A stretch of 64,000 nucleotides of DNA, taken from positions 124,001 through 188,000 of the forward strand of contig NIVC01001873.1 in the NCBI GenBank assembly GCA_002269645.1. Direction: 5' to 3'. Positions within the stretch are counted from its first letter, which is position 1; each line of letters starts with the position of its first letter. Source of the DNA: Macrostomum lignano. Taxonomy: Eukaryota. A program made the translations under genes and the position numbers. This document shows positions 13,832 through 61,989 of the stretch, one piece after another. The notes beneath the pieces were generated by a model. The model did not search any database. It had not been told where the DNA came from and saw only the letters and a program-made list of their open reading frames with translations.

Positions 13832-14611
13832 ATGTCGTCAGAAGAAGCCAATGTCGGAGGCGCAGCCGAAAGCGCCGAAGCCGAACAGAGCGGCTACGAG
13901 TCGGTGCTCTGCGTGAAGCCCGATGTGAAAGTTTTCCGCCTACCGCCTCGCCAGTCGAATCGGGCCGTACGCGCGGCCGACTGGCAGCTGGAGTCGCCCG
14001 ATTGGTCCGGCCGGCTGCGCGTGGTGGCCAACGGCAGCCAGCTGTGGGTGCGACTGGAGGACAAGACTAGCGGAGTCCTGTTCGCCCGCTGTCCGGTGGA
14101 CGCGCATCCCGGCCTGGCCATCGAGCCCGTGGCCGACTCCAGTCGCTATTTCGTTCTGCGCATCCGCGATGACTCCGGCCGAAGCGCCTTCGTTGGCATC
14201 GGATTCGACGATCGGAGCGACGCCTTCGACTTCAACGTGGCCGTGCAGGATCACTTCAAGTGGCTGCGGCAGGAGGAGGAGGCGCGCCAGGCCGCCAAGG
14301 AGATGGAGGCCGGGCCGAAGCTGGACCTCGGCTTCAAGGAGGGCCAGACCATCAAGATCAACATCAACACTCGCCGGACTGCCGACTCGTCGACGGCCAG
14401 CGGTGGCGCCAGTGAAGCTTTGACCAAGTCGCCGAGGCGGGAAAGACAGGTGGGGGTGGCTGGTGGGGCTGGCGGCCTCGGACTGCTGCCTCCGCCGCCC
14501 AGCAGCGGGCGGAACACCCATTCCAGGGGCGGAAGCGGGGGCGGAAGCGGGGGCGGAAGCGAAGGCGGCGCTGGGAGCAACCTGCCCGATTTGCTGGACA
14601 GCCTGGGCTGA
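13832..14611 (+). CDS. NECAP: NECAP (adaptin ear-binding coat-associated protein), single exon
   Basis: PHear-domain motifs [67 protein letters not shown] and [16 protein letters not shown]. Confidence 0.95.
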
Positions 14612-29023: not shown

Positions 29024-29849
29024 GCTGAGCAGTCAGCTGTCAAAGTCCGCTAAGTAAGATGGCGGAGGCTGAGCCCAGCACTCAGCTCCGTTTGCTTTTA
29101 TCTTGTCCTCTTTTCTGAGGAAGGCCAACTCACCTCCCAGCCGCTCAGCGAATCCTCACAATCCCCATCCCATCCTGCATGGCAGTTCGTCCCTCAGCCG
29201 CCATGGATTACTAACCCCAGGTGTCCGGAGAGAAGTTTCCTCATTTTGCTAGAAGCGAAATAAATAATTCAGAAAGTTGAAAGTCAATAAACTGAGCACC
29301 CGAGAGTCCAGATATTTCACCTTTCCTGTTGAACTAAGTCGCCAATAGTCTGCCCGATCCACCTTCAAAACTATTGCGGAGTGTTCACTTTTTTTTGATC
29401 CGTTTTCAACCTCTCCAGACTTCTCCAGCACTCCATGGCTCGCGGGTCGCTTCCTCATCTTCCCCCAATCGTCCCCTCTCAGATGGCCCCCTAATGTGAG
29501 CAGTTCCTCCGACCGTCTCCGCAGCTTCTTTTCAGGCTGCTGCTTTTGCTTTTGCTCTTCCCTTCAGTTTCTTTTTCTGTTTGCAGCCGCCCAGCCAGCC
29601 CAGGAGGCGCCGCCCTCCAGCCTCTGAGACTGCATCACAAGAGGAGAAGCCAAAGTCAGGGCTGGGTGTGGAATCTTCAGCTTGGTTGCCTGATGATGGG
29701 GGGATGCTGGGGCGTCCTTTAATTGCCGTTCTTATTTATTTGCCTGTCCGCTTTCTTCAGACCGGCTTTCTGGCCGGATTTGGGCGTTGTTTGGAAATTT
29801 CTGACTGCTGAATACTGGAGTAAGGCCGGCTGGGACAGAAATATATAAA

Positions 29850-31585
29850 GACAGACACTAAGACAGGCACTAGGACAGACACTAAGACAGGCACTAGGAC
29901 AGACACTAAGACAGGCACCAAGACAGACACTAAGACAGGCACTAGGACAGACACTAGGACAGACACTAAGACAGACACTAAGACAGACACTAGGACAGAC
30001 ACTAAGACAGGCACTAGGACAGACACTAAGACAGACACTAAGACAGGCACCAAGACAGGCACTAAGACAGGCACTAGGACAGACACTAGGACAGGTACTA
30101 AGACAGGCACTAAGACAGGCACTAAGACAGGCACTAAGACAGGCACTAAGACAGGCACTAGGACAGGCACTAAGACAGGCACTAGGACAGACACTAAGAC
30201 AGGCACTAGGACAGACACTAAGACAGACACTAAGACAGACACTAGGACAGGCACTAAGACAGGCACTAGGACATGCACTAAGACAGACACTAGGACAGGC
30301 ACTAAGACAGACACTAGGACAGGCACTAAGACAGACACTAGGACACACACTAGGACAGGCACTAAGACAGGCACTAAGACAGGCACTAAGACAGGCACTA
30401 AGACAGGCACTAAGACAGGCACTAAGACAGGCACTAAGACAGGCACTAAGACAGGCACTAAGACAGGCACTAAGACAGGCACTAAGACAGGCACTAAGAC
30501 AGGCACTAAGACAGGCACTAAGACAGGCACTAAGACAGGCACTAAGACAGGCACTAAGACAGGCACTAAGACAGGCACTAAGACAGGCACTAAGACAGGC
30601 ACTAAGACAGGCACTAAGACAGGCACTAAGACAGGCACTAAGACAGGCACTAAGACAGGCACTAAGACAGACACTAAGACAGGCACCAAGACAGGCACTA
30701 AGACAGGCACTAAGACAGACACTAGGACACCCACTAGGACAGGCACTAAGACAGACACTAGGACAGGCACTAGGACAGGCACTAAGACAGGCACTAAGAC
30801 AGACACTAGGACAGACACTAGGACACACACTAGGACAGACACTAGGACACACACTAGGACAGACACTAGGACACACACTAGGACAGGCACTAAGACAGAC
30901 ACTAGGACAGGCACTAAGACAGACACTAAGACAGGCACTAGGACACACACTAAGACAGACACTAAGACAGACACTAGGACACACACTAGGACAGGCACTA
31001 AGACAGACACTAAGACAGACACTAGGACAGGCACTAAGACAGACACTAGGACAGACACTAAGACACACACTAGGACACACACTAGGACACACACTAGGAC
31101 ACACACTAAGACACACACTAGGACAGGCACTAAGACAGGCACTAAGACAGGCACTAAGACAGGCACTAAGACAGGCACTAAGACAGGCACTAAGACAGGC
31201 ACTAAGACATGCACTAAGACAGGCACTAAGACAGGCACTAAGACAGGCACTAAGACAGGCACTAAGACAGGCACTAAGACAGGCACTAAGACAGGCACTA
31301 AGACAGGCACTAAGACAGGCACTAAGACAGGCACTAAGACAGGCACTAAGACAGACACTAAGACAGACACTAGGACAGGCACTAAGACAGACACTAGGAC
31401 AGACACTAAGACACACACTAGGACACACACTAGGACACACACTAGGACACACACTAAGACACACACTAAGACAGGCACTAAGACAGGCACTAATACAGGC
31501 ACTAAGACAGACACTAGGACACACACTAGGACAGGCACTAAGACAGACACTAGGACAGACACTAGGACAGGCACTAGGACAGACA
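29850..31585. repeat. 12-bp minisatellite (actaagacaggc)
   Basis: Directly visible. Confidence 0.97.
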
Positions 31586-32299
31586 CATTGGAGACAACTG
31601 GAATGCAATAGAGATCATACCAAGTGCTTGATTCAGCCATTCAGTCATTAATTCAAGAAGATGTACTTTTCAGAAATCAAAAGTCGCACTGCGCCGCCAT
31701 CAGGAATGCCAGGCTCAGCGGGAGTGCAAGCCTCGCCCTCAGCAAAGTCGCCAAGCTGATTAATCCAATGTCCGATTACAAAAAAGGCGGATCAGAACGT
31801 AGGAGGGCATTGGGGAATCGGGGAGAGAATTATCCCCATTCGCACAAGGGCCACGCCCTGAGCGCGGATTTGCTTTGCTCTGCCCCCGCTCATCCTGCAT
31901 CCGGAGATGCGAACGGTTCTCGTCCAGTTGACAGCCTGTGCTGCAGTGCTTCCCCGCTAGTGCGGCGGGATCTGCCCCAGGATTCCTTTCTCTGCCGTTT
32001 CTTGTCTACTAGTGGAAGCCAGTAAAAGAATCTGACCCAGTTTCCAGTGCCAGTTACCAGTAAAGACAGCCAAGATTGAAATTCTCCCAACCATGAATTC
32101 GCCGCGTGAAAAATGCAATCCTTCACTGTGGGGTGCAATTAATCCTTTGCGATCATTCGCCTTCGAACACCTGCCTTCCAGCCGCTGTGCTTCTGCGCTC
32201 CGTGCCGCTCTGCCTTTTTGCATCCATACTTGCCATCTGCAGCCGCTTCTGCTTCATCCAATTACTAATTCTTTAATTAACTTCCCGTTTCCCTACTCC

Positions 32300-42633: not shown

Positions 42634-43212
42634 TTACAGACGGTGGAATCGGCCAACCATTCGGTTGCAGCTCGGACAGATGTGCTCAACGTCTTTGCAC
42701 GAGTTCACGCAGAACGGGATCAGACAGCAGCCGAGCGACAGGCCGACGAAGAACAGAATAGCGGCAATCAGCCAGGTGTAGCCGCCGATCTTATAATAGA
42801 CAGTGGTCTGCACATTGTTGTGACAGTTTGGGCAGACCATCCACACCGGCGACTGGTTGAATCGCGGAATTGTGGCGTTCACAACCACTGGCTGCTGCTG
42901 CATCACTACCACATGATGCTGAGCGGGCTGGCCTTGGTAGCCGCCAGCGGCTGGGTAGGCAGGCGGCGGCGGCGGTTGCTGATGCTGCTGCTGAGCAGGG
43001 TAGCTAGTCGGGTACCCAGGCTGAGCTGTTGAGGCAGCTGGGTAGCTAGGCGGGTATCCAGGCTGAGCTGTGGAGGCAGTCGGGTAGCTTGGCGGGTATC
43101 CAGGCTGAGCTGTGGAGGCAGTCGGGTAGCTTGGCGGGTACCCAGGCTGAGCTGCAGACGGATTGGCGCCGTCCGTCTTGCTGACACCAACCGGGTGCAC
43201 GGTTCCGCTCAT
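42634..43212 (-). CDS. LITAF: LITAF-domain protein, paralogue 1, single exon
   Basis: SPVWMVCPNCHNNVQT...hydrophobic segment...GCCLIPFCVNSCKDVEHICPSCNRMVG; Pro/Tyr-rich N-terminus with repeated PPSY. Confidence 0.93.
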   Translation of the reverse strand: MSGTVHPVGVSKTDGANPSAAQPGYPPSYPTASTAQPGYPPSYPTASTAQPGYPPSYPAASTAQPGYPTSYPAQQQHQQPPPPPAYPAAGGYQGQPAQHHVVVMQQQPVVVNATIPRFNQSPVWMVCPNCHNNVQTTVYYKIGGYTWLIAAILFFVGLSLGCCLIPFCVNSCKDVEHICPSCNRMVGRFHRL

Positions 43213-45215
43213 GTCCTCCTGAACGATGAAGACCAATAGTTAATGTCGACTAGAAGCTCCGATGCTGAGTCTCCTCTGATCTGCTTTACAGTCTTAGCAG
43301 TTCCCTTAAACTGGCAAGGCACAGCTTGTCAGAGAGAAATAGAGTGGAATAGATCGTCTGCGTGCGCAGCTCAGACTGCCGTTGTCATTGGCAACGGCAA
43401 ACAATACTCCGCTTCCACTCCGGACTGTACAATGTCACTCCAGTTCCTCTCTCCTCAGGTAAGAGTGGCACCTGAAAACTCCTCCGCCCTCTCGAATACA
43501 GGGAAAGAGAGTTCACGAGATCAGGCGTACAGCCTGGACGGAATGAATGCCATTGCGACGAGACCCTGCTGTGCATTCCATTCTTGATTCTGTCTGTTGG
43601 GATTTTTAATTTTCTAGCAACACTGTACTAACGGACAGCTCAACAGAGGACTGTACGAGTACAGTAAGTCCCTGAATTTAACTTGAATTTTACAGCTGGC
43701 AAGAGTTTGCAATTTAGACAACTGTATGGATTTCCAGATTGATTGCTAACATTACGAGAGGACGCAGGACCCGCACAAAAACGTGCAAATTTTATTAAAG
43801 ACTGATTATTTAATTTTACGTAAGCCCGGCCACAGAAACTCGTCGAAGTGTAATTTTATCCCAGGAAGTGCATGATTTTGTCCCCATTCAGTTAACAGTA
43901 GGAACACCAAGCCAAGCCAAAATTTAAGAACATGGGCCAACTTTTTGTTGCGCACCTTCTCAAACAAGAATCAAGTCGCCAGCCCTCCGGACCGTCGAGA
44001 TATTCGACGAGTCTGCCAGAAGGTCGGATGTTTTTCTCAAAAGCGCCAGTGTATTCAGGACACCCCTGTGCGCCAATCAGCACTGCACCTCAGTGCAGCC
44101 TTGCCAAGCCTCCGAATTTCATCGGCAATTCGACGACAAGTGTCTGCATCAGCTCTGACTTCGTTTGTCACTGGCCTTCGCCCAGGCGGAGCTTCTGGAC
44201 TTCAACAGATGGCCATTGTTGAAAGTCCAGACTTTTGTTGCCACTATGGACCATGTTGCAAATTTCTTGAGTTTCGCTGATCAAGCTCCGACAGTGGGCA
44301 AGCCTCAACTGCTGGACATCCTCAGCTAGTCTCTCAAGCATTCAGTCGTCATCTGGACGTCGTCGGCACCTGACACCAGGCGACTATGGACTTCCTGTTG
44401 CAACTATGTCAGATTTTTCTTATTAATAACACTCCTAGTCGCCTGGTACAGCATGCAACAGGAAGACCTTTGGTAGCTCTACTATCAATACAGTGTATGC
44501 ATAATGCATGGTTTACGATTATATTATATTTTATTTTTTTCCATGTCTATAGTATACGCCAAGAACTACTTAACCACTTGGAAATTCCAGCCTCTAAAAA
44601 TTATATGGATCGTCCTATATAAACGAAACTTAACTAGTCCTTGAATTCTTGATCTAAGAGTTCCGTCACAGAATTGTTTAGCTAAACCGCACATTGACCA
44701 GAAAGCGATTTGATAAAAAGTCATTGATTGTTCCAAAATTGGTTATTATCCCAAAACGCTATCATATTTAGATAGACTTTGCTGTAGCGGTCAATACGCG
44801 ATGGGATGTGATAAGATCTTTGCGGACGGGATCTCGAGACAAGTTGGAAGAAGACACAGTGAACCACAGGTTGCGGAGCAGTTGTTAACAGCTTTTTACC
44901 CATTTTTACTTCTGAAAAACTTGGAACTTTCAACCCTACCAAAAACTTCAGATGGCTGTAAGCTGCCTGAAAAAGTAAAGTCTTTAATTAAAAACAGACC
45001 TCTCACACGAAAACTTTTGCTCCCGACTGGTCCCGAACAGTCGGGATTGACATCCGGAGTTCTGCTTTGCTGGTTCAGCGATTTCCACAGGTGAAAATCG
45101 TGGTCACCCACTTTTCCATGCTGATAATAGCTGCGTTCTAAGCAAGCTTTAGGCACTTTTTCGCACATTAATCTTAAATTATTTGAACCCAGCAATTTTG
45201 ACTATCAATTTATAT

Positions 45216-45862: not shown

Positions 45863-46342
45863 TCAGCAGCGCTTGTACACTCCTATCTGGTTGTTGCAGT
45901 TCGGACACGAGTGCTTGACATCCTTGCAGGCGTTAGTGACGAATGGAATGAAAATGCAGAGCCAAAGACAGGTGATAAACAGCACGGCCGCTATTATCCA
46001 GACCGTCACGCCGATGACGTACTGGGTATTAGTCATGATGTCGGCCCCGCAGAACTGGCAGGTCATGCGGGTTGCCGCCTCTCCCAAGTTCGCTGTGCCC
46101 ATGCCCATGGCCGGGACTGCAACTGGAACTGCAACGGGTTGAACAGGCTGATAGGCAGCTTGTTGGTAGCCAGCTTGCTGGTAGCCAGCTTGCTGGTAGC
46201 CAGCTTGCTGTGGGTACCCGTAATGCGACTGGTTTTCAACTGTCGCATTTCCAGTTGTCGACTGTTGGTTTCCAGACGACTGGCTGCCGGCTTGCTTCTC
46301 CTTCGCAGCCGACTGGTAGCTGGGCGGTGGAGTGTCTGACAT
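45863..46342 (-). CDS. LITAF: LITAF-domain protein, paralogue 2, single exon
   Basis: MTCQFCGADIMT...WLCIFIPFVTNACKDVKHSCPNCNNQIGVYKR; N-terminal PPPSY. Confidence 0.93.
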   Translation of the reverse strand: MSDTPPPSYQSAAKEKQAGSQSSGNQQSTTGNATVENQSHYGYPQQAGYQQAGYQQAGYQQAAYQPVQPVAVPVAVPAMGMGTANLGEAATRMTCQFCGADIMTNTQYVIGVTVWIIAAVLFITCLWLCIFIPFVTNACKDVKHSCPNCNNQIGVYKRC

Positions 46343-47839
46343 GGCTGATGGCTGGGCTGCGACGGCTTGGCTAAACTGAGTGTGCAACCTTTTTTAGGCA
46401 GCTATCTGTCCGACTCCGCACCTGGGCTATGCGATTGTTTTCGCCTGCACTTCTACGTTTCCATAGTTTTGTCTATGTGCTAAAGTGCTGCTGCGAGTAA
46501 CTCGTTAAAAGCGCTTGAGTTTAGAAGACAGGCGTGTAAGGCTGCGTTTTGGCCTTACAGAAGTGCATCTACTTTGCATTGGCCTCGTGTGAGTCATCCG
46601 TATAACAGTTTTTATTCCTGCTATCTTCTGCTCACAAGTCAGAAAGAATTCTAACACACTGGCCTCTAAGGGCCCTGTTATGAGTGTGAGGCTCACATCT
46701 CGGAATCTTTCTATGCCGCAAATTATTCAAGACAGTGTATTTTATTGTCAAGCAAGCAAACTGGTTTAGTTGACAAAATGAAGAGCAATGCATAGTATGA
46801 GCGGGGCAGGGTTATCGCTCGAGCATTTTTCTCTGTCCCGCTGTTAGGCAACCATATCACCCCCCAAAGCATTGCTGCGATTCCACTGTGTCACGCGTTC
46901 GCAGGCTGCTGGCTTGGCCTTCGAACCTCAGCTTTGTTATCTGCCCTTTAATGTAGAGCTGGTCTGGCTGGATAGAACCGGGCGAGACGAGAGGAGGCCG
47001 TTGTTTTTTCGCTTCGATGTAAGCACAATTCCAGTGCTTACAATCCATCACATTATAAAATATCAATCAATGATTTTACAGGCAGTTCTCAGAGTCACTC
47101 TGAAACGGAGATGCATTTTAACCCCCCCCCCCCAGTACTGATATTGCAGAATTAACGTAGCTCCTGCTAAATCCTGCTAGTTATAGAACTCACTGACTCA
47201 TATATAGGAGCAACATAGCAGCACATCCTATACATGGCTGTGGATAGTACACTGTAGATATTACATGTATTACATGGATGATGCACATGATGTGGTGCTG
47301 CAGATTGTTTCAGCATGATTCCTCGCTGGCTGCGGTACTCGTATTATTTCTCATGGATGTACAGTGTACGCTTGTAAAAAGGCCTCTAAAACAAAAAAAT
47401 GTATGTTTCGGATTCATTTTGGTTATGTAATAGTCTTTGGAGCAGATAATACATTTTGCATCATAAGAGTTCAAATTTGCGTATAGCTTATAAGTTCAGC
47501 AGAAGAACGAAAACATTTGCGGGACAGTAGAAATTTGCGTTGAGCTAAGCAGAAATTTTTATGTCTGGATAAACAAGCAAATATTTTAGTTGTTGTATTA
47601 AATATTCTAACATTTTAATTTCATTTTGTTCTCTTAACAGAAAGTTGAGTTACTTCAACAAGGTTCTCAAAAACTGTAAAAAAATAGTACACACCTCGTA
47701 TAAACATAGTTGTTAGAAGTGTGTTAAAGAGCTGTAGCGCTTTGTTTTAAAGCCGTTTAAACACACGCAAGTACAATGTAGAAAACGAAAAGCCTACAAG
47801 TTTCAATAACTTTTTTCATCTGCTTGTCACACAATTAGA

Positions 47840-48316
47840 TCAGTTAGCCTTGCAGACGCCGATGGTTCCACGGCAGTTCGGGCAGGAGTGATGCGCGTCC
47901 TTGCAGGAATCCACGCAGAATGGAATCAGACAGCACAGGGCAAAGCCGAATATGCACAGAAGAAAACAAATTAACCAGGTGAAGCTGCCAGGACTGTAGG
48001 TGACCAGAGTGTTCACATAGCTGCTACAATACGGACACGTCAGTGGAACCGGGTAGCGACCTAATTTATAGGCCGTTGCGGTGGGTAAGGATGCAGTTTG
48101 AATATTAACTACTGTCTGTTGCTGCTGCTGATGCTGCGACTGTGGCTGCTGCTGCTGTGGCTGCTGCTGCTGTGGCTGCTGCTGCTGTGGCTGCTGCTGC
48201 TGTGGCTGTTGCTGCGGCGGGTAGCTCTGCGGCGGGTAGGCCTGGTACGGCGGCGGCGGGTATACGGGCTCAGGAGGCTTGCTGCCAGCAGGATCCGGGT
48301 GTACGCTGTTATGCAT
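47840..48316 (-). CDS. LITAF: LITAF-domain protein, paralogue 3, single exon
   Basis: PVPLTCPYCSSYVNT...LCCLIPFCVDSCKDAHHSCPNCRGTIG; N-terminal PPPPY and QQQQP repeats. Confidence 0.93.
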   Translation of the reverse strand: MHNSVHPDPAGSKPPEPVYPPPPYQAYPPQSYPPQQQPQQQQPQQQQPQQQQPQQQQPQSQHQQQQQTVVNIQTASLPTATAYKLGRYPVPLTCPYCSSYVNTLVTYSPGSFTWLICFLLCIFGFALCCLIPFCVDSCKDAHHSCPNCRGTIGVCKAN

Positions 48317-49010
48317 GATTTCTAATGCTATTTATTTCTACTTGAGAACTGGCTCTAGTGCTGTATGTAAACTATAGATTCAACTAAAGTCGAGGCGCAC
48401 GGCCAAGCCGCACCCACAGCTTGCTGAGCTGGCTTTATTATGCAAATTTTCGCCTGCGTTTTCATCACTGTACAGTCCGGCTGCAATGTGAGTCTGTGTG
48501 CAGTGCGCAGCAGTAATTGTGTTTGGAATGGCTTTTGCGCGCAACCCCCGTTGTTGGGAGCAACGAGAGAAATACGAGGTAGAATATTAATATTTTTTCA
48601 AGCCTTACACAGCTATACATATATTCTTCTGTATAGCAATGAAGAAATAGCAAAATGTAAGTTGTGCTTACCGGCTCTCTCTCGCGCCTCAGAAACAATG
48701 TGAAGGCCCTGTTTGTTTCGTTAGCTAGCTAGCTCGTACGCGTGTATGCAGCCACCACAGCAAGCCAACACAGCAGGGCTTGCCTAATAAAGTGAACGAT
48801 ACTGCAGCTAGTATGTGTTTGTTCATGTTGCGCGACCAATGAAAGATGAAGATCAAAAAACAATCTGTCTTTATGCTTACGGAATTTGGACTGTGGACTA
48901 GGATGCTATGCGGAAACTTTTGTTTTTATAGCAATTACATGTACATGGTTCTGTAGCAAGATTGTTTAATTATAAAATTTATTAGAATAATATCAACGAA
49001 CTTTTCACAT

Positions 49011-49346
49011 TGAGCCTCTTCAGGGCAATCGGTTCTAGAACCAGAATAAATTCGAGTTCTAGAACCAGAACCAGTGTGAAATGAAGAGCTTCGAATTCAT
49101 TTTATGTTTGACAGTCTTTACAATTTAATTTTGTCGTTCTTTGACTTTGTTTCCTCTTGGATATAACAAAAAACGGAATAATTATCTAACAATACAATAA
49201 TAAAAAATTGATGGTTTCAAATATATATTACTGTTAAAGTGTAAACATGACAACGGTTCGAAAAAATTTCTCGAACCATATTCCAGAACCAGAACCATGT
49301 TCCGGAACTAATTCTGTTTTTCGAACCGGCGATATGAAGAGGCTCA
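49011..49346. mobile_element. MITE-like element with 12-bp terminal inverted repeats
   Basis: TGAGCCTCTTCA...TGAAGAGGCTCA, plus subterminal cggttc/gaaccg and internal agaacc repeats. Superfamily not assigned. Confidence 0.6.
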
Positions 49347-50510
49347 TGGTGAATTTTGGCTGTCGCGTGCGCTCGCGCTAAGACGCAGCTAAACATTGAG
49401 CAACTTTGTATTGTTAGTTCTGTACCACTCTCTTTTTCTGGTTTTCATGGTCGCTCCAGCCTGGTAAACCTAGCTAAAGTCCTACTGTACATGTAAATCA
49501 TTTCCTGTAAATACTTTCCGGATAACCCCCGCCTGATCCTTGTAACATATGTATTTAGGCAATCCACTATCCAGTCATGCTATATTATGAAACCTCTCAT
49601 AATATTGAGCCTGTTTAGACTCAAGTCTTCTCAAGACAATGACAGAAACAGCTCTTACCATTCCCTGTGAAAGATTTACAGTTTACATAAATTTACAGTT
49701 TGAAAATTTCCCTTTCCTGTAATTACATGTAAAACAGACAAATTCTTCCTAATTTAGCACTGAATTTGTTTAAATATGCTCGTAAATGCAAGACTTTCAA
49801 CGAATTCACAATCAAATTCTTCGCGCAATTTCTAAATTAAGAGAATGTATTGTGAACGTATTCGAATTTACCTAAATGTCTAATCTCTTTTGATGAGGAC
49901 GCACTTTTTCCCAAATCCCGCGCTAGCACATGGGCTCTAAACTTACTTGCCTACTAACAGTGGGCAGTGGGCATTTTTATCCTTTTTCTGCGAATTTTCA
50001 TAGAATCTATACTAGATATAATGTCTGGCCATACTAGTAGTCATAATAACATAGGCGCAGCTTTTTGGGTCGTAAATCATCGCTTTCGAAGCTGATCTGA
50101 CAGCCACCTGCGCCTCACTCAGTGTTGAAGCGGGCGCCAGATGGTCTGAGAGGATGCGGGCGGTAGCTTTTTTTTCTCATCATTTTGACAGGCCATCAAG
50201 ATTTATGAGGTCAGAGCCTATTGTTCGGATTCACTCAAGCGTGTGACAGCTTTGACAGCTATGCGTTGTACCCCTAAAAGTACCTTGGGATTAGCGATTA
50301 GCGATTTCTCTTCATTATCTTCACTTTCTATTTAATAAGAGCTTTCTAATGTATATTTTTTCATTAATTTCTGTCAATCCTACGCGAAAAGTCATAAATC
50401 ATTTTGTTGCGATTTTGAGTGATTTATGGCCGCACCTGTCATCTTTTTACGACCCTGTGGGAACTGATAGGATCTCTCGGTCACGTGATTCTGGGTAGCA
50501 ACGAGCTTAG

Positions 50511-50612
50511 CCAATCAGAAAATTCGGCGCTCATTTTAACAAAACGGCTCAGCCAATCAGAATCGACGTGTTCCGTTATAACAAACTGCGGTCCAGTTGG
50601 CGGCTATTTAAA
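50511..50612 (+). promoter_or_regulatory. Pol II promoter: two AGCCAATCAGAA CCAAT boxes and TATTTAAA
   Basis: CCAAT at 50511 and 50553, TATA at 50605-50612, in a CpG-rich context. Confidence 0.65.
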
Positions 50613-50814
50613 CCGGAGTTTTTGGCCCGCTCGGACGCAACTTCTTCTTACTTTGGCTCGGGCCCAGCGCGCAACTTCTGGTTCCCGGAGCACGACCGTC
50701 GTTTCTTGATCCCCGGATTGCAACTTCCCCCATCATCATCAAGGACGAGTCCCCCGGTCGACAGCAGCGAACATCCAGTTAAGAGCATCACCTGCTAGCT
50801 AACAGCGAAGATTG

Positions 50815-51888
50815 TGACAGCATCATCCCGAGTCTACAGCTGCAGAGCATCGAGCCGATTCGGTCACTGGGAATACCTGGTCTCCGGCTGTTGAGTTTCT
50901 GATTGGTTGGGTGAGAGGCTACCTAGACTTGCTTGATTGGGTGATCCCTTTTCTGTCCCCTGTTGCAGTAGCTGAATTAGGCGCACACTTTTGCTCATTT
51001 TGTTCAGTAGTGCTGTTGCTGAGGCAGGAATCATTCAATAATACTGCCAGTAGTCTAAGACTCCAATTCAATCTAAAGTGTAAAGTGAATTAAGGAGAAG
51101 GTTAAATCTAACAGTTATCTTTGTCGGCTTTATTTCTTTGTTCGCCGATGGCTCAGATGAGTAGCTAAGCTAGTAGGCGCCGGTCACAGTGGACCAATGG
51201 CAAGGCAGTTCTCAGTCGACCAATCTAACAAATCAGTGAGCAAAACTGCCAGAAGTGCAGAATCGGCGCCAGAGATGTACTTTGTGCACTCTAGGGTAGC
51301 CAAGCGGCTCGGGTAAATGAATCATGCGGTCTCTGAAGTTCGAGTTAGCCTATCATCAGCGCTATGAGAGGCTAGTTGGCGCGTTGAAGGCTAAAAGTAC
51401 ATATCTTCGTATTTAGCAATGTAATAGTACATGTAGCTACCCCATAGACTCGCCACCGCAAGAATCCCCTGCACAAGTCCCCTCTGTACCTGCATGGCCA
51501 ACGCGATCTAGTCCCAGCAGTGTCCCTTATCATCGGCTATGACTTCGAGATTGACAGCAAAAAGACACCAGTTGGCAGGTAAGTGCAAAGCCCCTTCTAG
51601 TCGGAAGCCCGATTTCGAGAGTCCCGGTGTGGTGAGCCAGGGCGCACGGGCTGGTGGCAGCAAGTTAGTTGATCTGCGGATTAGCTAATTTCTACTTTCA
51701 AAATTCTCCCTGCTCGTCTCTCGCTGTCCCTCTCTTAGCTATAGGACCTAGACTGCTCGCCACACGATCAAGCTACCATGGGGCTGACCATCTGACAGGA
51801 GTGGGGGGCCAGGTCTCTAATTGATTTATTTCTGAGCCTGAGGCCCGAAGGCTTCCCTAACAAGGAGCCCGAAGGTCGAAACCCATCA
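50815..51888 (+). ncRNA. Putative structured (possibly spliced) long non-coding RNA, copy 1
   Basis: Homologous to 52172-53256; no shared ORF; conserved splice-site motifs and helices (see findings). Confidence 0.5.
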
Positions 51889-52128
51889 CTTTGTTCATAA
51901 CGATGATCATTAGGCTAAAGCTTAGGAATTTCTCTCCATTCTCTCATCTCGGCTAAGTTCTATACTAATTTATGCCATTACTATTAATTTTCTTAGGAAC
52001 TCAATGTAATTCGCTTAGGATCCTAATTTTGAATTGTTTTTGCATTTTTGAAGGTCAGACTGTCTGGGTTCGAGACGGATTGACCTCCAACAGTCTAGAC
52101 AGGCGACACTGTGAGGCCGCGTGAGAGC

Positions 52129-52135
52129 TATAAAA
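52129..52135 (+). promoter_or_regulatory. TATA box of ncRNA copy 2
   Basis: gcTATAAAAggcgg about 40 nt upstream of the start of homology; AATAAA at 53269-53274 just after its end. Confidence 0.55.
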
Positions 52136-52171
52136 GGCGGCAACTCGACCCGCGCTCGAGAGAAAAAGGAG

Positions 52172-53256
52172 CAACAGCATCCCATCTGAGCGCTTCGGTC
52201 TCTGTGGATTCCTTGGCTACCGGCAGATAGGTCCTCTGATTGGTTTGGTGAGAGGCTCTCTTGACCTGCTTAACTGGGTGCACCCTTTGTCTGACCCCTT
52301 CCTAGGTAGTCTGATATGATTTGCACTTTTACTTACTTGCTTTTGTGTGCCAATCTCAAGGCAGAAGTGTCAGTTAATAATAAAAGTAGCCATTTGCTCT
52401 ACTCAATCTAAAGTGTTTAGGATTGCGGATTAAGTGAGAAAGTTAAATCTGGAAGTTAAAGACTTAGCGTTTTCTTTCTTTTTCGCAATGCCAGCTGAGA
52501 TGAGCGGCTAAATCTAGAGGCAGAGGTCACGGTGGACCGGAAGCGGCACAGTTCCCAGTCAATCAGACAATCTAAGAAATCATTGTGTTAAGCATGCAAA
52601 TTAAGAGCCAGACTGGCGTTTTGGCGCGGTCACAGGCAGTTAAGCGGCTAAAGTAAGTTAAATATTAGTCTAACGATCTCCGAAAGTGACAATGCATCTA
52701 CATCATCGCCATCTGTCGACGTGTTAACACATTTAGTGCCAAAAGCGTGCAGTTGCGTGTACTTTTACATGTACTTCTGGGAATTTGGTAATGAAATAGT
52801 ACATTTAGTAGTGTATGAAGGCTCGCCAGCGCAAGAACCCCCCTGCAAAAGTCCTCTCTGTCCCTGTATGGCCAATGCGATCTTAGTCCTAGCAGCATCC
52901 CTTCTATTCGGCTATGACTTCGAGATTTAGACAGCTAAAAGACACTAGATGGCAGGTAAGTGCAGTGCCCCTCTAGTCGGAAGTCTGATTTCGATAGCTC
53001 CGGTTTGGTGAGCCGGGGCGCACGGACTGGTGGCAGCGAGTTAGTTAATCCGCGGGTTAGCTAATTTCTACCTTTCAAATTCTCCCTGCTTGTCTCTCGC
53101 TGTCTTCTCCTAGCTATAGGACCTTGCTGCTCGCCCACAATCTAGCTACCATGAGGCTGACCATCTGACAGGAGTGAGAGGCCAGAGCTCTCAGTGATTC
53201 ATTTCTGAGTTCTGCTGAGGCCCGAAGCTACAGGCTTAAAAAGGCCGAACCCATCA
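52172..53256 (+). ncRNA. Putative structured (possibly spliced) long non-coding RNA, copy 2
   Basis: Diverged paralogue of copy 1 with indels that break any reading frame. Confidence 0.5.
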
Positions 53257-54479
53257 AACTTTAAAATGAATAAAATTATTGTGAACTTTATTGCTTGCGC
53301 GTGAGCATCGATCGCTAATTTGATTCACTTCTTTCCCAATATTTCGTATCTTTCTGCTGCGCCTGCATGCTAATGCTACTGAAACAGCCTTCCTATTCGT
53401 ATTTTATTATTAACTAATTAACTTTCAAGTTTTAAATAAACGAGTTACTTCTTTTACCGTATGCTTGCTTTTAGTAGTATTATACGCGGAGGTTTTTAAA
53501 ATTATTTTCTATTACTTTCTTAGCTTGTAAATCGCTTAGATGAGCTCTGTGATTTCGCTAAAAAGGTGGAAAATCAAAGACAGTGCATTATGGAAGTCTG
53601 TTTTGGAAAAAAGTGCAAGATTTCTGTATTTTCTGTGTTAACTTTAACGGATTAACTCTTATTAACGATTATCAGTTAACTTTCAGTTTACTTAACGAAA
53701 TTAATAGTTAATAAGTTAAGATTTTTTTCTTTTAACGCTTTTGCCATTAACGGAAGTTAAGATTTTCATTAACGGTGCCCAACACTGCAATATTCGTTGT
53801 GGTGACAGATGAATGAATGAATGCGTGATGCGTCCTTGGCTTGGTGAAATGCGCCTTAATTTATTCCATATATATATTTGTATAATCTATTTTTGCAATA
53901 AAAGTAATTAGATATATTATTTAAACTGGATGGACTCGAATTCTGGAACGACTACGCTACCCTAGAACTACCACGGCCGCGCGCCTATAGAAACCAGCTA
54001 ACACCAAACACAGCGCATTCGCGTTTCAAACGATACGAATTAACATACAGTAAAACAATAGTAATAAAGTACGTACAGTAAGTATCGCGGAAAAGAAAAC
54101 ACTACTGAATAAAAAACTGACAAAAATAATTAATAAATAATTTCCAGGAACGCAGGATACATTATAAAAAGTACATACATTCAAATGATGCGTAAAACTT
54201 TACAAGAATTTGTATATCGCTGCACGACAATTAACAACTAACTTGCCAGCAAGCTTGCTTCTTACAAATTTTACGAAAGTCGGTGCGCTTCTTATATCTT
54301 AAGAACCAGGTCCATTCTGTTTCAGTTAAAGTTTAAAATTATTCTTGAAAAATTCGAAGGACCTAATCAACCGCTTCTGCTCTTGTGTAGCTGTAGCTAC
54401 TCATTTTCTATTTCATCCCAGCAATAAACACTGACTTACAGTTGCTAAGGCTAAGCTATCGACTTGATTGAAATCTTAA

Positions 54480-54640
54480 ATGTCTCGTGGTTCAAAGACA
54501 GTTTATGTTGGGAACCTGCCACCTGACGTCCGATCTAAGGACATTCGTGATTTGTTCGACAAATATGGAAACATTCGTGAAATTGATTTAAAAAATAGCA
54601 GGGGACCACCTTTTGCATTTATTGAATTCGATGATGAAAG
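54480..54640 (+). CDS. SRSF1: SR splicing factor SRSF1/SRSF9-like, first coding exon (RRM1 N-half)
   Basis: [53 protein letters not shown]: RNP2 VYVGNL and RNP1 PPFAFIEF as in ASF/SF2. Phase-2 donor AG|gtaatt; upstream acceptor ctgacttacag| at 54441. Too short for the ORF track. Confidence 0.92.
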
Positions 54641-54781
54641 GTAATTTTATTACAAAATGGAAATTATTGTACGTCTAAGCCTAGATGATTATTTGAGTGT
54701 TTGGAGTCCATAAGACTATACCTATAGGTGATCTTCCAGTTTGTTTTGCAGTATTATTCGCTTGTTTATTTTAGTTTAAAA

Positions 54782-56917: not shown

Positions 56918-57912
56918 CTAAGCTTTTATGTGCAGGGCCTCGAGAATTCTAAGTTTGGCATCAGTATGGCTTTGGTCAATGATTTTAAAGTGTTCTTCTT
57001 GTTTGCAGTCATTGCAGTTAGTGCATTCAAGGAGGTGAGTTTGTATAGCAGATGGTTTGAGCCAGTGTTCCCTGATCCTCGTGTGTAGGTGTCTTGGTTT
57101 TCCCCATGTAGGAGACGCTCTGCGGCTCTGGTCCACAGAGCAGTTAAATTGGTAGACAACACCTGCACACAGAGTACAAGGAACACGCGACTTTAATCTG
57201 CTAACAAAGTTCCCAATCTTGTTCGTGTGGAAGATGACCCGGATGTTACAATTGAAAGAGGCAAAGAATAACCTACGCATTCTGTTTTTAAAGGCTAGAG
57301 ATGGAGGTCCAAGGAAGGGGAGATGCAGAATGGGTTCAAATTCTTCAGTGGTAACAGATTGCTCAGGTTTTTGTTTGGTGATTTTGTCCGAGATGAACTT
57401 GTTGATGATTTTTTGAACCAGACAAATGGGGTAGTCATTTTCATGGAACAGTCTGGTGAGGAACTGCACCTCCCGGTCAAAGTTGATCCAGGTGTTACAG
57501 GTAGTGAAAGCTCTATGGAGCAAACACCTCACGAGCCCAGTTTTCCATTGTCTGGGGCAAGTGGCTTGGAAGTTGAGAATGAGATTGGTAAAGCTTTTCT
57601 TATGGAAGACTTTTGTGGAGAGGGTTTCCTTACTGTAGTCAATGTCAATGTCCAGGAAGGGGAGTCTTTGGTCAACAGCATGTTCAACCGTGAATTTTAT
57701 GTTCTTATGAGTGGAGTTGAGAGCGTGGAGGAACTGATCAATTTTTTGCTCCTGATCAAAGATGGCAAACATATTGTCGACGTAGCGCCTGTAGAATTTG
57801 GGGGCACAGTTGAGAGACATCCAGTTTTCAGTTTCCCAGTGGGCCAAGCAGACATTCGCCAGAGTGGGGGCCAAGGGGCTTCCCATGGCATAGCCATCAA
57901 CTTGCCTATAGT
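56918..57912 (-). pseudogene. Penelope-like RT (domains 5-7, thumb) and GIY-YIG endonuclease, decayed
   Basis: YRQVDGYAMGSPLAPTLAN, RRYVDN (YVDD variant), LPFLDI, VFHKK..., and GVVYQFNC...HTRIREH. The YMG half-motif is displaced by frameshifts, and there is a premature TAG in EALHIKA*TPNLNTQ. Confidence 0.9.
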
Positions 57913-59029: not shown

Positions 59030-59140
59030 CAATCAGGGAACTAAGTTGCAATTAGGAGGAACTAAGTTGCAGTTAGGAGGAACTAAGTTGCAGTTAGGAG
59101 GAACTAAGTCACAATTGGGAGGAACTAAGTTGCAATTGGG
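59030..59140. repeat. 21-bp minisatellite (ggaggaactaagttgcagtta)
   Basis: About 5 copies. Confidence 0.88.
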
Positions 59141-59548
59141 AGATTTTTCTGCCTGTTGTCTAGGCATTGCAATAGTGTATCTAGGCATTATATATATGGC
59201 AAATTTTCTAAGGCATGATACATAGAAGGCTCCAATTTGTGTGCAGCACAATGGTGTTAGAAGAAATTGTTTCTTGCCCATGGTTTTAGTAAACTTGTAA
59301 GTCCAACTTGACTTCCTGTCATCATAGATGCTTTATCTGTTGTAACAGCCCATAGTCTTATGAAACAACTGTCATAATACTATCTTAAGTAAATAAATCT
59401 TTTATCATACAATGCTTTGTCTTATTTCTGACTGACAGTTGCTTAAATCTATAGAAGTACATTATTAGTTTGCTCTTCTCAAGCATCCAGAAGTATATCA
59501 TTAGGTAACTGTTTATATTACTATATATCTTTTTCTTGGAGGACTCAC

Positions 59549-60106
59549 TTCTTTGGCCATCAGTCTCAGTCTCCAAATCTGAGTCCAAATGAATGGCTGT
59601 ATGTGATCGTTGGATCTGGGCTTCAGTATCAGCATCAATTGATAAGCAACATTCTATAGCAATATATTCAACATGAGCATTGCGCCATCGTACAAATTCT
59701 GTCTCAAGACATCTAGTTTCTTCATTCATTTCAAAAGCAGCTTTTCTTTCAGCTGACATTACTCGAGAAGAGCAATATGTGTGGGTTGTTACATCTGCAC
59801 TATGAATCTCAATTTTTCCATTCTGCACAGCTAGATCTCTTTTAGAAGCAACAACCTCTAGATTTTGCATTGCCATTAACAGTCTCTCTCTGTGTGAGCT
59901 TGCTGAACATTGGGATGGTGGTGTTTCTAGTTTCCTTGAATGCACTGCAGCTGCACCATCAACTGATCCCTGGGCTGCACTTAAGATTGTTGGTAAATTT
60001 TCTTCTACATGTAATATCAAATGTGTACTAGAACAATCATCAACTTCTCTAGAAGTTATACAACCAACTTTCCATTGTGTAAAGAGCAATAGCTTTTGCT
60101 CTTCAG
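59549..60106 (-). CDS. Orphan internal coding exon (186 codons, phase 1-1), unknown protein
   Basis: Stop-free non-repetitive frame bounded by a strong acceptor ctctttctgcag| and donor A|gtgagt; length 558 = 3 x 186. No partner exon identified. Confidence 0.55.
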
Positions 60107-61126
60107 CTGCAGAAAGAGGGCACTGGTTGATAGAATAGTCTTCATGGCCTTTTCATCCCATTCACATGCAGGATTCAGTATATAGTCAGGTGTAGGTCTA
60201 TCTTTAAGTTAAGTATATAATGACTCGAGGAATATACACCTATATATATGAGTGCACAGTGTACATATACAAGTTAGTCTGTCACATACAGTACAGTATG
60301 TAGAGTGTAATCTACAGGGTATAGGCTACAGTGCAGTTTAGTACTGCAGTCTGCAATGCTGCATAAGTTGAATGATAAATCAATTGGGAAAGAGAGTGAG
60401 GGCAGGAGAAAGGGAAGAGAAATGAGGTACTTCCATTCTTCAATAAGCACAAGCATGCAAGGCATGCTACCCCCCCCCCCCCCCCCCCAGTCCTTCAGTG
60501 TGGTGGCACATAGATAAGTCACAAATCTGGACAAAACTATGTTGCACTGGATGGGTGAAATTTTGAGGTTAAGCATGTATGTCTAACAGTGCAAGCTTTT
60601 ATAGGTTAAGGCTAATATCAATAAGCTTGGTAGTCAGCCTCCGGTTGGCTTTAGGCCATTGCAAAGTTGGCTAATTTAAATGTATGATGTACATTCATTA
60701 CATATGGCAAAGTTCTGTTGAATTGACTGATTAGATAAGATAAGCATTTTGACTTGTCATTGTGTCTATGTAAAAGTTCTTTATAATGGCTTTAAGAAAT
60801 CAGACAGAAATAAGTCTCATTTATATGGCCTTTGGGTGTAGCCTAGCTAATGCATTTATTTTTCATTAAATGAATTTTCAATATATAAAGAATAGTTCAA
60901 TTTAACAAAATATATTACATTTTAAACATATTTATATAGTACGAGGCCAACTCCTCCGTTGGAGGAGAAAGGGGAAGAACTCCCATCATCGGAATCCATC
61001 AGCTGAATCCTATGACCCGAATCCCATCATCCAAGGTCTCTCTAAAATCCATCAAATTCCTCTCCATGAAACAGAAATCCATTAAAATCCTCTCTTTTAA
61101 ACAGATTTTTATTCATAAAAACTCTC

Positions 61127-61830
61127 TCAGTCAAACAGATATTGATCAAAACTCTCCGTGAAACAGAAATCCATTAAAATCCTCTTCGTGAAACAGAACT
61201 CCATCAGAATCCTCTCCGTGAAACAGAACTCCATCAGAATCCTCTCCGTGAAACAGAACTCCATCAGAATCCTCTCCGTGAAACAGAACTCTATCAGAAT
61301 CCTCTCCGTGAAACAGAACTCCATCAAAATCCTCTCCGTGAAACTTAAATCCATCAAAATCCTCTCCATGAAACTTAAATCCATCAAAATCCTCTCCGTG
61401 AAACTTAAATCCATCAAAATCCTCTCCATGAAACTTAAATCCATCAGAATCCTCTCCATGAAACTTAAATCCATCAAAATCCTCTCCATGAAACTTAAAT
61501 CCATCAAAATCCTCTCCATGAAACTTAAATCCATCAAAATCCTCTCCATGAAACTTAAATCCATCAGAATCCTCTCCGTGAAACTTAAATCCATCAGAAT
61601 CCTCTCCGTGAAACTTAAATCCATCAAAATCCTCTCCGTGAAACTTAAATCCATCAGAATCCTCTCCGTGAAACTTAAATCCATCAAAATCCTCTCCATG
61701 AAACTTAAATCCATCAGAATCCTCTCCATGAAACTTAAATCCATCAAAATCCTCTCCGTGAAACTTAAATCCATCAGAATCCTCTCCATGAAACTTAAAT
61801 CCATCAAAATCCTCTCCGTGAAACCGATAT
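61127..61830. repeat. 30-bp minisatellite (aaaatcctctccgtgaaacttaaatccatc)
   Basis: Directly visible; two sub-variants arranged in blocks. Confidence 0.95.
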
Positions 61831-61989
61831 TCATCAAAATTCACTGTTGAACGAATATCTATCAATTATCTCCTTCAAGCAAAAATCCATCAATTTAATT
61901 AACAGACTCTGTTAAATTGGAGTGTATTAAAAACGCTTTCTAATTGTCTGGCTTAAATATATGCAAAGAAAAGGATTCAGTGGTTAGGG

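What the first reader, a model, noticed from the sequence alone, without database searches (positions are those of the whole stretch)
50815..53274. Tandemly duplicated about 1.1-kb non-coding unit with conserved RNA helices and splice-site motifs
The two copies are diverged with frame-breaking indels, yet substitutions preserve pairing in several helices: GUUAGUU(G/A)AUC-[U/C]GCG-G(A/G)UUAGCUAAU, 11 bp with a tetraloop (51664-51689; 53040-53065); CUAGUC/G(G/A)CUGG (51597/51649; 52973/53025); CUCUCGCU/AGUG(G/A)G(G/A)G (51718/51800; 53094/53173); G(U/C)G(A/G)AU/(G/U)UUCGC (51085/51140; about 52425/52482); and the invariant GGUC/GACC and GGG/CCC hairpins. Three donor motifs (50911/52248, 51313/52653, 51579/52956) and a GCUAAU-pyrimidine-UAG acceptor (51744/53119) are also conserved, and both the branch-like motif and the pyrimidine tract are base-paired. 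An H-box-like AGAUGA is shared (51155; 52498), but ACA is not positionally conserved. I cannot assign this to a known family. Options are a structured lncRNA or small-RNA host gene, structure-regulated introns, or leader/LTR sequence of an unknown element. Most changes are wobble-type, and two copies give limited statistical power.
Basis: partly seen in the sequence, partly recalled or inferred. Interest (0 to 1): 0.8.

Follow-up and report, generated by a model that had tools for sequence, protein, structure and literature searches.

The report
Duplicated non-coding unit, structure claim unsupported
Two diverged tandem copies of a roughly 1.1-kb non-coding, gene-like unit sit upstream of a splicing-factor gene in an unidentified invertebrate genome, but apart from one small hairpin the reported "conserved RNA helices" are no better preserved than random mutation would leave them, so this is most likely an ordinary duplicated non-coding transcript.

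Summary
The duplication is real. Two copies lie about 1,375 bp apart. Identity is 84-90% over the 3' ~410-440 nt, about 68% over the 5' ~400 nt and near noise in between. The window holds no third copy.

The central claim fails. The three helices in the conserved block show five one-sided G/A changes opposite U and no double compensatory change. Only 20.5% of all potential stems hit by a substitution stay paired, against 30 ± 7% when the same substitutions are placed at random. Folding energies match shuffles. Mismatches are evenly spread and the putative intron is as conserved as its flanks. Rfam gives nothing, even at E ≤ 10.

One exception is an 18-bp bipartite hairpin that depends on G·U pairs, at 51653-51696 and 53029-53072. 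It covers a branch-point-like CUAAU and is suggestive but unproven.

Best reading: an old tandem duplication of a CCAAT/TATA-driven, spliced non-coding transcription unit. It lies between a LITAF-like gene cluster and an SRSF1-like gene, and its 3' part was probably homogenised later by gene conversion. No relatives could be retrieved, so transcription and orthologue covariation remain untested. Interest is low.

The parts
50511..50560 (+). Two identical AGCCAATCAGAA boxes (NF-Y-type CCAAT boxes) 42 bp apart, upstream of copy A
   Evidence: CCAATCAG occurs 7 times in 64 kb (2.9 expected) and 4 of them lie in 50511-52243. Sequence. Double CCAAT boxes are a known NF-Y promoter architecture (PMC4889920).
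50605..50612 (+). TATA-like box TATTTAAA of copy A; the inferred start site is near 50637
   Evidence: (regex). The start site is inferred, not shown.
50856..51900 (+). Copy A of the duplicated unit. It aligns to copy B from about 50856, with weaker similarity back to about 50726.
50899..50906 (-). Inverted CCAATCAG box directly 5' of GGTGAGAGG, conserved in copy B at 52236-52243
   Evidence: repeat family D3.
50911..50968 (+). Candidate intron 1 of copy A (GTGAGA...TTGCAG, 58 nt). The copy B counterpart, 52248-52305, is also 58 nt.
   Evidence: both are 58 nt and 39/58 positions are identical. These are motifs only; splicing has not been shown.
51411..51850 (+). High-identity 3' block of copy A (84-90% to 52783-53227)
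   Evidence: 55 mismatches in 407 aligned positions, 9 indel events, and mismatches evenly spread (p = 0.48).
51579..51744 (+). Candidate intron 3 of copy A: CAG|GTAAGT donor, CUAAU branch-like motif, a pyrimidine-rich stretch of about 45 nt (interrupted by CAAAA), and an acceptor at TAG (51738) or TATAG (51744)
   Evidence: the only two CAGGTAAGT sites in the window are 51576 and 52953..
51653..51696 (+). Bipartite hairpin in copy A: a 5-bp outer stem, a CAGC bulge, a 13-bp stem and a UGCG loop. The 3' arm contains GCUAAU.
   Evidence: All 4 substitutions in the stems are compatible with pairing. The stem depends on G·U pairs, so it forms on the + strand only.
52129..52136 (+). TATA box TATAAAAG of copy B; the inferred start site is near 52163
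   Evidence: In the alignment it sits opposite non-TATA sequence of copy A.
52191..53274 (+). Copy B of the duplicated unit
52956..53119 (+). Candidate intron 3 of copy B
53029..53072 (+). Bipartite hairpin in copy B (CGCG loop)
53269..53274 (+). AATAAA after copy B, followed by GU-rich sequence. Copy A has no AATAAA or ATTAAA before 52379.
54163..54641 (+). Downstream neighbour: TATAAAAA (54163), an ATG-free 288-nt leader (54192-54479) and the first coding exon (54480-54641) of an SRSF1/SF2-like SR-protein gene
   Evidence: (73% identity to human SRSF1 aa 18-65; the probe sequence was written from memory).
47840..48316 (-). Upstream neighbour: the third of three tandem LITAF-domain genes (the others are at 42634-43236 and 45863-46387)

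Best explanation
An old local tandem duplication of a non-coding Pol II transcription unit of about 1.1-1.3 kb on the + strand. It lies in the 6-kb intergenic region between a LITAF-like gene cluster (- strand) and an SRSF1-like gene (+ strand).

Each copy has promoter-like motifs. Copy A has two NF-Y-type CCAATCAG boxes and a TATA box. Copy B has a TATA box. Both have an inverted CCAATCAG. Each copy also has a 58-nt candidate first intron and a candidate last intron of about 160 nt with a perfect U1-consensus donor. Copy B ends with AATAAA. The products would be lineage-specific spliced long non-coding RNAs, and copy A may read through into copy B.

The contrast between about 86% identity in the 3' 410 nt and about 57-68% elsewhere is best explained by later homogenisation of that segment (gene conversion or unequal exchange) followed by neutral divergence, rather than by selection on RNA structure. 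The helices are a by-product of high identity, a transition-rich mutation spectrum and the many possible G·U-tolerant pairings in pyrimidine/purine-rich sequence.

Shown: the duplication, its non-coding nature, the motifs, and the lack of a structural signal. Inferred: transcription, splicing and the conversion history.
For: - The duplication and its uneven identity are established.
- It is non-coding. The one spliced 39-codon ORF that is open in both copies has a frame-shifted middle, and 7 of 8 nucleotide changes in the shared frame are nonsynonymous.
- Promoter and splice motifs are enriched: 4 of the 7 CCAATCAG sites in the window and both CAGGTAAGT sites fall here.
- The 3' block looks neutral. 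Mismatches are evenly spread (variance 2.69 against 2.72 under permutation, p = 0.48). Identity is 83.5% before the donor, 87.5% in the intron and 88.9% after the acceptor. There are 9 indel events per 55 substitutions.
- There is no structure signal: (20.5% of stems retained against 30 ± 7% under neutrality).
- No known RNA family matches.
- The neighbourhood is prone to tandem duplication: three LITAF paralogues and dozens of satellite arrays.
- The SRSF1-like gene has its own TATA box and ATG-free leader, so the units do not need to be its leader exons.
Against: - There is no transcript evidence of any kind. The source organism and all relatives are absent from every searchable collection.
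- Uniform purifying selection on the 3' block cannot be separated from gene conversion with only two sequences.
- The hairpin at 51653-51696 is longer than expected by chance and keeps all four of its substitutions compatible, which hints at some RNA-level constraint.
- Copy A lacks a canonical poly(A) signal.
- The TATA boxes of the two copies are not at homologous positions.
Confidence: 0.5

Rival explanations
1. The 3' block of about 410 nt is a functional RNA module under purifying selection. Its 18-bp G·U-dependent hairpin sequesters the branch-point-like CUAAU of intron 3 and so controls removal or retention of that intron. On this reading it is a regulated, possibly splicing-factor-responsive, lncRNA next to an SR-protein gene.
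For: - The hairpin is predicted in both copies.
- The alignment-fold z-score is -4.9 on the + strand and -0.2 on the - strand.
- A hairpin of 13 bp or more occurs in only 2-3% of shuffled units.
- All 4 stem substitutions are compatible with pairing, and no A·C mismatch occurs among its G·U pairs.
- The block is about three times less diverged than the rest of the unit.
- A perfect U1 donor is retained.
Against: - The substitution rate inside the stems (4 of 36 positions) equals the block average.
- There is no double compensatory change.
- The rest of the block shows no structural or patchy constraint.
- Indels are frequent.
- The hairpin window was chosen after seeing it.
- Proximity to the SRSF1-like gene is circumstantial.
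Confidence: 0.2
2. The units are duplicated alternative promoters with non-coding leader exons of the downstream SRSF1-like gene. Their CAG|GTAAGT donors would splice to an acceptor upstream of the ATG, at ctgtttcag| near 54326 or cttacag| near 54441.
For: - The units are on the same strand as the first coding exon and 1.2 kb upstream of it.
- Strong donors are conserved in both units.
- Plausible acceptors lie ahead of the ATG.
Against: - The SRSF1-like gene has its own TATAAAAA at 54163. Its leader is ATG-free from 54192 to 54479, which is true of only 0.2% of local 288-nt windows.
- The units carry many ATGs: 7 + 3 in copy A and 6 + 6 in copy B.
- AATAAA with a GU-rich downstream element follows copy B.
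- The units show no homology to the region just upstream of SRSF1.
Confidence: 0.15
3. The units are a decayed mobile-element remnant (an LTR pair, solo LTRs or another repeat), or a purely DNA-level duplicated cis-regulatory region with a cluster of NF-Y sites and no RNA function.
For: - CCAAT and TATA boxes followed by a poly(A) signal resemble an LTR layout, and double CCAAT boxes occur in ERV LTRs (PMC4889920).
- The window is rich in mobile elements: Ty3/gypsy pol at 70-3836 and a Penelope-like ORF at 56918-57886.
Against: - The units show no similarity to either element or to anything else in the window.
- No ORF lies between or beside the copies.
- No TGG-type primer-binding site follows the copy ends.
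- Identity between copies ranges from about 45-58% to 90% along the unit, unlike paired LTRs, which decay uniformly.
- The promoter regions of the two copies are not homologous.
- Genome-wide copy number could not be tested.
Confidence: 0.1

Closest known systems
Lineage-specific spliced Pol II long non-coding RNA genes, including tandem paralogues
   Same: It has no conserved ORF, TATA/CCAAT promoter motifs, short introns with canonical signals, a poly(A) signal, rapid sequence turnover and no Rfam family.
   Different: Transcription is not shown here. The copies share a high-identity 3' segment that needs gene conversion or selection to explain.
Gene conversion between tandem duplicates (for example in globin or histone clusters; own knowledge)
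   Same: A sharply bounded tract of about 440 bp is about three times less diverged than the flanking homologous sequence, and differences inside it are evenly spread.
   Different: There is no outgroup or third copy with which to show conversion directly. The tract is non-coding.
snoRNA or small-RNA host genes (GAS5/UHG type; own knowledge)
   Same: It is a non-coding spliced unit in which the intron is at least as conserved as the exons.
   Different: There is no intronic C/D or H/ACA candidate and no Rfam hit at E ≤ 10. The intron is not more conserved than its flanks (87.5% against 83.5% and 88.9%).
Splice-signal-sequestering RNA hairpins (for example the tau exon 10 5' splice-site stem-loop and SMN2 TSL2; own knowledge)
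   Same: A stable local stem covers a core splicing signal, here a branch-point-like CUAAU about 50 nt upstream of the acceptor.
   Different: No functional or comparative evidence exists. The true branch point is unknown. The only support is two paralogues with wobble-type changes.
LTRs of LTR retrotransposons
   Same: The order CCAAT, TATA, poly(A) signal, the unit size of about 1 kb, and two direct copies.
   Different: There are no internal or adjacent gag/pol genes, no primer-binding site or polypurine tract, non-homologous 5' ends and very uneven divergence.

Membership tests
Any Rfam family | Covariance-model score at or above the gathering threshold | tested here: not met
   One search found 0 hits in the whole window at gathering threshold. 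One search found 0 hits at E ≤ 10 in 50300-53500 on both strands.
Evolutionarily conserved structured RNA | Compensatory (double-sided) substitutions, or pairing retained above a neutral null | tested here: not met
   25 pairs, 0 double changes and 5 one-sided changes; 20.5% of substituted stems stay paired against 30 ± 7% under random placement of the same substitutions (P = 0.93). Two sequences give little power (compare PMC11234323).
Evolutionarily conserved structured RNA | Folding energy below that of shuffled sequence or alignment | tested here: not met
   Searches give z-scores from -1.18 to +0.66. In one search only the hairpin window (z = -4.9), 51590-51700 (-2.5) and 51260-51440 (-2.8) depart from shuffles. 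The whole block gives -1.0 on the + strand and -1.9 on the - strand.
snoRNA host gene | Intron-encoded box C/D or H/ACA snoRNA | tested here: not met
One search found no C-box/D-box/terminal-stem candidate on the + strand of either copy. One search found no snoRNA family.
miRNA or mirtron | Hairpin of about 55-70 nt with a stem of at least about 22 bp | tested here: not met
   The longest conserved hairpin is 44 nt with 13 + 5 bp.
LTR retrotransposon (LTR pair or solo LTR) | Associated gag/pol, a primer-binding site and polypurine tract next to the repeats, homologous ends, and uniform divergence between the repeats | tested here: not met
   One search shows no ORF. One search shows no similarity to the Ty3/gypsy or Penelope-like elements. 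One search shows identity ranging from about 45% to 90%. One search shows that the 5' ends do not align.
LTR retrotransposon or dispersed repeat | Multiple dispersed genomic copies with target-site duplications | not testable with these tools
   The source genome is not available. There are 2 copies in the window and 0 hits for the 20-mer and 21-mer in metagenome contigs.
Spliced-leader RNA gene | A short 5' exon next to the start site, a donor followed by an Sm site between stem-loops, and a homogeneous multi-copy array | tested here: not met
   There are only two copies, 14% diverged, with homology extending about 700 nt upstream and 270 nt downstream of the donor. No SL family was found in Rfam. 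No canonical AAUUUUGG motif is visible.
Telomerase RNA | A template complementary to at least about 1.5 telomere repeats | tested here: not met
   One search found no 8-10-mer of the CCCTAA, CCTAA or GCCTAA type (or other common repeats) shared by the copies.
Protein-coding gene or micropeptide | An ORF conserved between copies with a codon-position bias of substitutions | tested here: not met
   One search shows mismatches spread flat over the three codon positions in every block. One search shows a 39-codon spliced ORF open in both copies, but its middle is frame-shifted and changes in the shared frame are 1 synonymous to 7 nonsynonymous.
Pol II spliced lncRNA gene | Promoter motifs, splice signals and a poly(A) signal on one strand | tested here: met
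   with the sequence. The poly(A) signal is present for copy B only.
Pol II spliced lncRNA gene | Evidence of transcription and splicing | not testable with these tools
   No transcriptome or close relative could be reached.

The most novel reading that the evidence does not exclude
The 3' module is a lineage-specific functional RNA domain. A G·U-dependent 18-bp hairpin occludes the branch point of its own intron, giving a structure-gated, possibly SR-protein-responsive, non-coding transcript. It would be kept in two copies beside the SRSF1-like gene.
Probability: 0.1. Interest if true: 0.5.

Novelty: new member of a known kind. Interest (0 to 1): 0.2.

Why it matters
If the best explanation holds, this is one more fast-evolving duplicated non-coding transcription unit. 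Its main value is as a caution: at 86% identity with a transition-rich spectrum, "helices preserved by wobble changes" are expected without any selection. Here they are, if anything, fewer than the neutral expectation.

Only the branch-point-covering hairpin deserves a second look once the source species and its relatives can be examined. A structure-gated intron in an lncRNA next to an SR-protein gene would be a modestly interesting regulatory arrangement.

Tried and rejected
- **Known RNA families:** Rfam at gathering threshold (whole window) and at E ≤ 10 (region) found nothing.
- **tRNA-derived SINE:** no tRNA anywhere in the window.
- **Coding:** six-frame comparison, mismatch periodicity and spliced ORFs were all negative. 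The 39-codon spliced ORF and the 5-7-codon mini-ORFs (MAQMSS / MPAEMSG, MGLTI / MRLTI) show no coding constraint.
- **Third copy or SRSF1 homology:** local alignment z-scores were about 0, and repeat D7 is chance.
- **Telomerase RNA template and C/D snoRNA scans:** both negative.
- **Hairpin elsewhere:** a covariance model of the hairpin searched across the window found only the two source copies plus satellite noise.
- **Relatives:**
  - An exact look-up of the neighbouring LITAF protein found nothing on record.
  - Three protein searches (LITAF, NECAP, SRSF1 exon 1) gave best identities of 47-57%, 69% and 75%. The organism and its close relatives are therefore absent, and orthologous loci are unreachable.
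  - Two metagenome scans with 20-21-mers invariant between the copies gave 0 hits.
- **CpG-transition signature:** uninformative, with 7 of 36 transitions at CpG sites.
- **ATG-free 722-nt stretch at 50427-51148:** not conserved in copy B, and comparable stretches are common in this repeat-rich window.
Full report
**Context**

The window is from an animal genome that I could not identify.
- It carries a Ty3/gypsy pol gene (70-3836), a rhodopsin-type GPCR ORF and an intronless NECAP gene.
- It also carries three tandem LITAF-domain genes on the - strand (42634-43236, 45863-46387, 47840-48316) and a Penelope-like RT/GIY-YIG ORF (56918-57886, - strand; the Pfam scan of this ORF found no family, so the label rests on reading the translation).
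- Dozens of mini- and microsatellite arrays are present.
- The best protein matches are distant: NECAP 68-69% (Macrostomum, molluscs), LITAF 47-57% and SRSF1 exon 1 75%. Neither the species nor a close relative is in the searchable collections.
- The finding lies in the 6.2-kb gap between the last LITAF-like gene and the first coding exon of an SRSF1/SF2-like SR-protein gene on the + strand. That exon starts with ATG at 54480 and ends at the donor AAG|GTAATT at 54641/54642, and is 73% identical to human SRSF1 residues 18-65.

**The observation**

The tandem duplication is real. blastn aligns 51411-51850 with 52783-53227 at 84% identity (E 1e-129), and 50856-51238 with 52191-52585 at 68% (E 7e-19). 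The window contains no further copy.

Identity along the alignment is very uneven:
- about 75% at 50860-50935;
- 45-58% from 50950 to 51410;
- 84-90% from 51440 to 51830;
- a collapse after about 51850.

The unit is non-coding.
- No ORF exceeds 96 aa.
- Each frame has stops in one copy or the other, and mismatches are spread evenly over the three codon positions in every ungapped block.
- One spliced ORF of 39 codons is open in both copies. It runs from ATG 51539/52914 through the donor and the TATAG| acceptor. Its middle is read in different frames in the two copies, and in the shared frame 7 of 8 nucleotide changes are nonsynonymous. I treat it as chance.

**The structural claim**

This is the core of the finding, and it does not hold.
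- The three helices inside the conserved block comprise 25 pairs that are paired in both copies. They carry only five one-sided G/A changes opposite U and no double-sided compensatory change.
Copy A's block contains 94 potential stems of at least 6 bp (G·U allowed, span up to 150 nt). Substitutions in copy B hit 78 of them, and 16 (20.5%) remain fully paired.
- Placing the same 55 substitutions, with the same base changes, at random keeps 30 ± 7% of stems paired. The observed value is therefore not elevated (P = 0.93).
- The minus strand gives the same fraction (20%).
- Single-sequence folding energies are indistinguishable from dinucleotide shuffles, with z-scores of -0.13, -1.18, +0.66 and -0.03.
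- Alignment folding against column shuffles is unremarkable for the block, at z = -1.0 on the + strand and -1.9 on the - strand.
- Rfam gives no hit, even at E ≤ 10.
- The purine run AGUG(G/A)G(G/A)G can pair equally well with other pyrimidine runs. RNAalifold pairs it with CCCCUCU at about 51478. This shows how unconstrained such pairings are.
- One-sided wobble changes at otherwise conserved positions are not covariation evidence (PMC11234323).

**The one exception**

A 13-bp uninterrupted stem lies at 51662-51691 and 53038-53067. It extends by a 5-bp outer stem across a CAGC bulge to 51653-51696 and 53029-53072.
- A hairpin of 13 bp or more appears in only 2-3% of dinucleotide shuffles of a whole unit.
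- The local alignment-fold z-score is -4.9 on the + strand and -0.2 on the - strand, because the stem relies on G·U pairs. That window was chosen after seeing the hairpin.
- All four substitutions in the 36 paired positions keep pairing.
- The substitution rate in the stem equals the block average, and every change is a half-compensatory transition. The case is therefore suggestive and not established.
- The 3' arm contains GCUAAU, a branch-point-like motif about 50 nt upstream of the acceptor.
- A covariance model of the hairpin finds no other instance in the window.

**What the unit looks like**

Signals on the + strand resemble a Pol II gene.
- Upstream of copy A, two identical AGCCAATCAGAA boxes sit 42 bp apart (50511, 50553), followed by TATTTAAA at 50605.
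- Copy B has TATAAAAG at 52129.
- Both copies carry an inverted CCAATCAG (50899, 52236).
- CCAATCAG occurs 7 times in 64 kb against 2.9 expected, and 4 of these lie within 1.75 kb here. Double CCAAT boxes are a known NF-Y promoter arrangement (PMC4889920).
- The only two perfect CAGGTAAGT sites in the window are the donors at 51576 and 52953. Each is followed about 105 nt later by CUAAU, then a pyrimidine-rich stretch of about 45 nt, then TAG/TATAG.
- A candidate first intron (GTGAGA...YAG) is exactly 58 nt in both copies.
- The second donor motif (GTAAAT/GTAAGT) is weak evidence, because GTRA occurs about 8 times per unit by chance and no shared acceptor follows it.
- AATAAA with a GU-rich downstream sequence follows copy B at 53269. 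Copy A has no canonical signal before 52379, so its transcript may run into copy B.
- None of this shows transcription.

**Why the 3' block is so similar**

Within the block the 55 mismatches are spread as evenly as random placement would give. Bin variance is 2.69 against 2.72 under permutation (p = 0.48).
- Identity is 83.5% upstream of the donor, 87.5% in the putative intron and 88.9% after the acceptor.
- There are 9 indel events.
- Selection on an exon or on RNA stems should produce patchiness, and none is seen.
- A uniformly diverged, sharply bounded tract inside an older and much more diverged duplication is what gene conversion or unequal exchange between tandem copies produces.
- I therefore favour later homogenisation followed by neutral drift.
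- Uniform constraint on the block cannot be excluded with only two sequences.

**Relation to the SRSF1-like gene**

The units could be alternative leader exons, but the gene appears self-sufficient.
- TATAAAAA at 54163 is followed from 54192 by a 288-nt stretch without any ATG, up to the start codon. Only 0.2% of local 288-nt windows lack an ATG.
- The units contain many ATGs.
- The units show no homology to the SRSF1 upstream region or to exon 1.

**Other identities tested and rejected**

| Candidate | Result |
|---|---|
| LTR or other mobile element | No similarity to the window's elements, no ORF, 5' ends do not align, divergence uneven |
| snoRNA host gene | No C/D candidate, no Rfam family |
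| miRNA or mirtron | Hairpin too short |
| Spliced-leader RNA | Two diverged copies, homology extends far beyond an SL RNA |
| Telomerase RNA | No template |
| tRNA-derived SINE | No tRNA in the window |

**Verdict**

Its interpretation as structure-preserving evolution is not supported.

The most likely object is an old tandem duplication of a CCAAT/TATA-driven, spliced, non-coding transcription unit with a later-homogenised 3' segment (confidence about 0.5). The rivals are:
- a functional 3' RNA module with a branch-point-occluding hairpin (0.2);
- duplicated leader exons or promoters of the SRSF1-like gene (0.15);
- a decayed mobile or purely cis-regulatory element (0.1).

Interest is low (0.2). 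The hairpin is the only element worth revisiting when transcript data and orthologues become available.

Noticed in passing
window 54163-54641 (+): The first coding exon of an SRSF1/SF2-like SR-protein gene ([54 protein letters not shown]) has its own TATAAAAA box and an ATG-free 288-nt leader. The remaining exons are not in the window. A long AT-rich first intron follows and contains a Penelope-like fragment.
   Followed up: partly
window 42634-43236, 45863-46387, 47840-48316 (all -): Three tandem, apparently intronless LITAF-domain genes with Q/P-rich N-termini. The best database identity is only 47-57%.
   Followed up: partly
window 51539-51861 and 52914-53236 (+): A spliced 39-codon ORF from the same ATG to the same stop stays open in both copies, because a +2 indel before the donor is offset by two 1-nt deletions after the acceptor. 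Changes in the shared frame are almost all nonsynonymous, so I judged it chance.
   Followed up: yes
window 50427-51148 (+): A 722-nt stretch without any ATG spans the copy A promoter and 5' half. It is not conserved in copy B, whose first ATG is at 52316. Comparable stretches elsewhere in the window are mostly satellite arrays.
   Followed up: partly
window 53600-53780 (+): A dense cluster of TTAAC / TAACGG motifs (Myb-site-like YAACGG, at least 3 copies) lies between copy B and the SRSF1-like promoter.
   Followed up: no
window 49004-49353: A MITE-like element: 19-nt terminal inverted repeats (TTCACATTGAGCCTCTTCA / TGAAGAGGCTCATGGTGAA, 89% complementary) 312 nt apart, with internal GGTTCTAGAACC palindromes.
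   Followed up: partly
window 4128-43154, 59037-61840: An unusually high density of micro- and minisatellite arrays (periods 4-88 bp, up to 2.2 kb long, for example 25189-27421 and 29848-31586). Many of the long mechanical ORFs in the window are translations of these arrays.
   Followed up: partly
window 70-3836 (+) and 56918-57886 (-): A Ty3/gypsy pol gene (protease, RT, RNase H, integrase) with long open frames and about 60% GC, well above the surrounding genome. Separately, a Penelope-like RT C-terminal/GIY-YIG ORF lies inside the SRSF1-like first intron (identified by reading the translation; Pfam gave no hit).
   Followed up: partly
window 13823-14611 (+): An intronless NECAP (PHear domain) ORF. 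Its best hit is Macrostomum lignano at 68%, and this is the only clue to the taxon. It may be a retrogene.
   Followed up: partly
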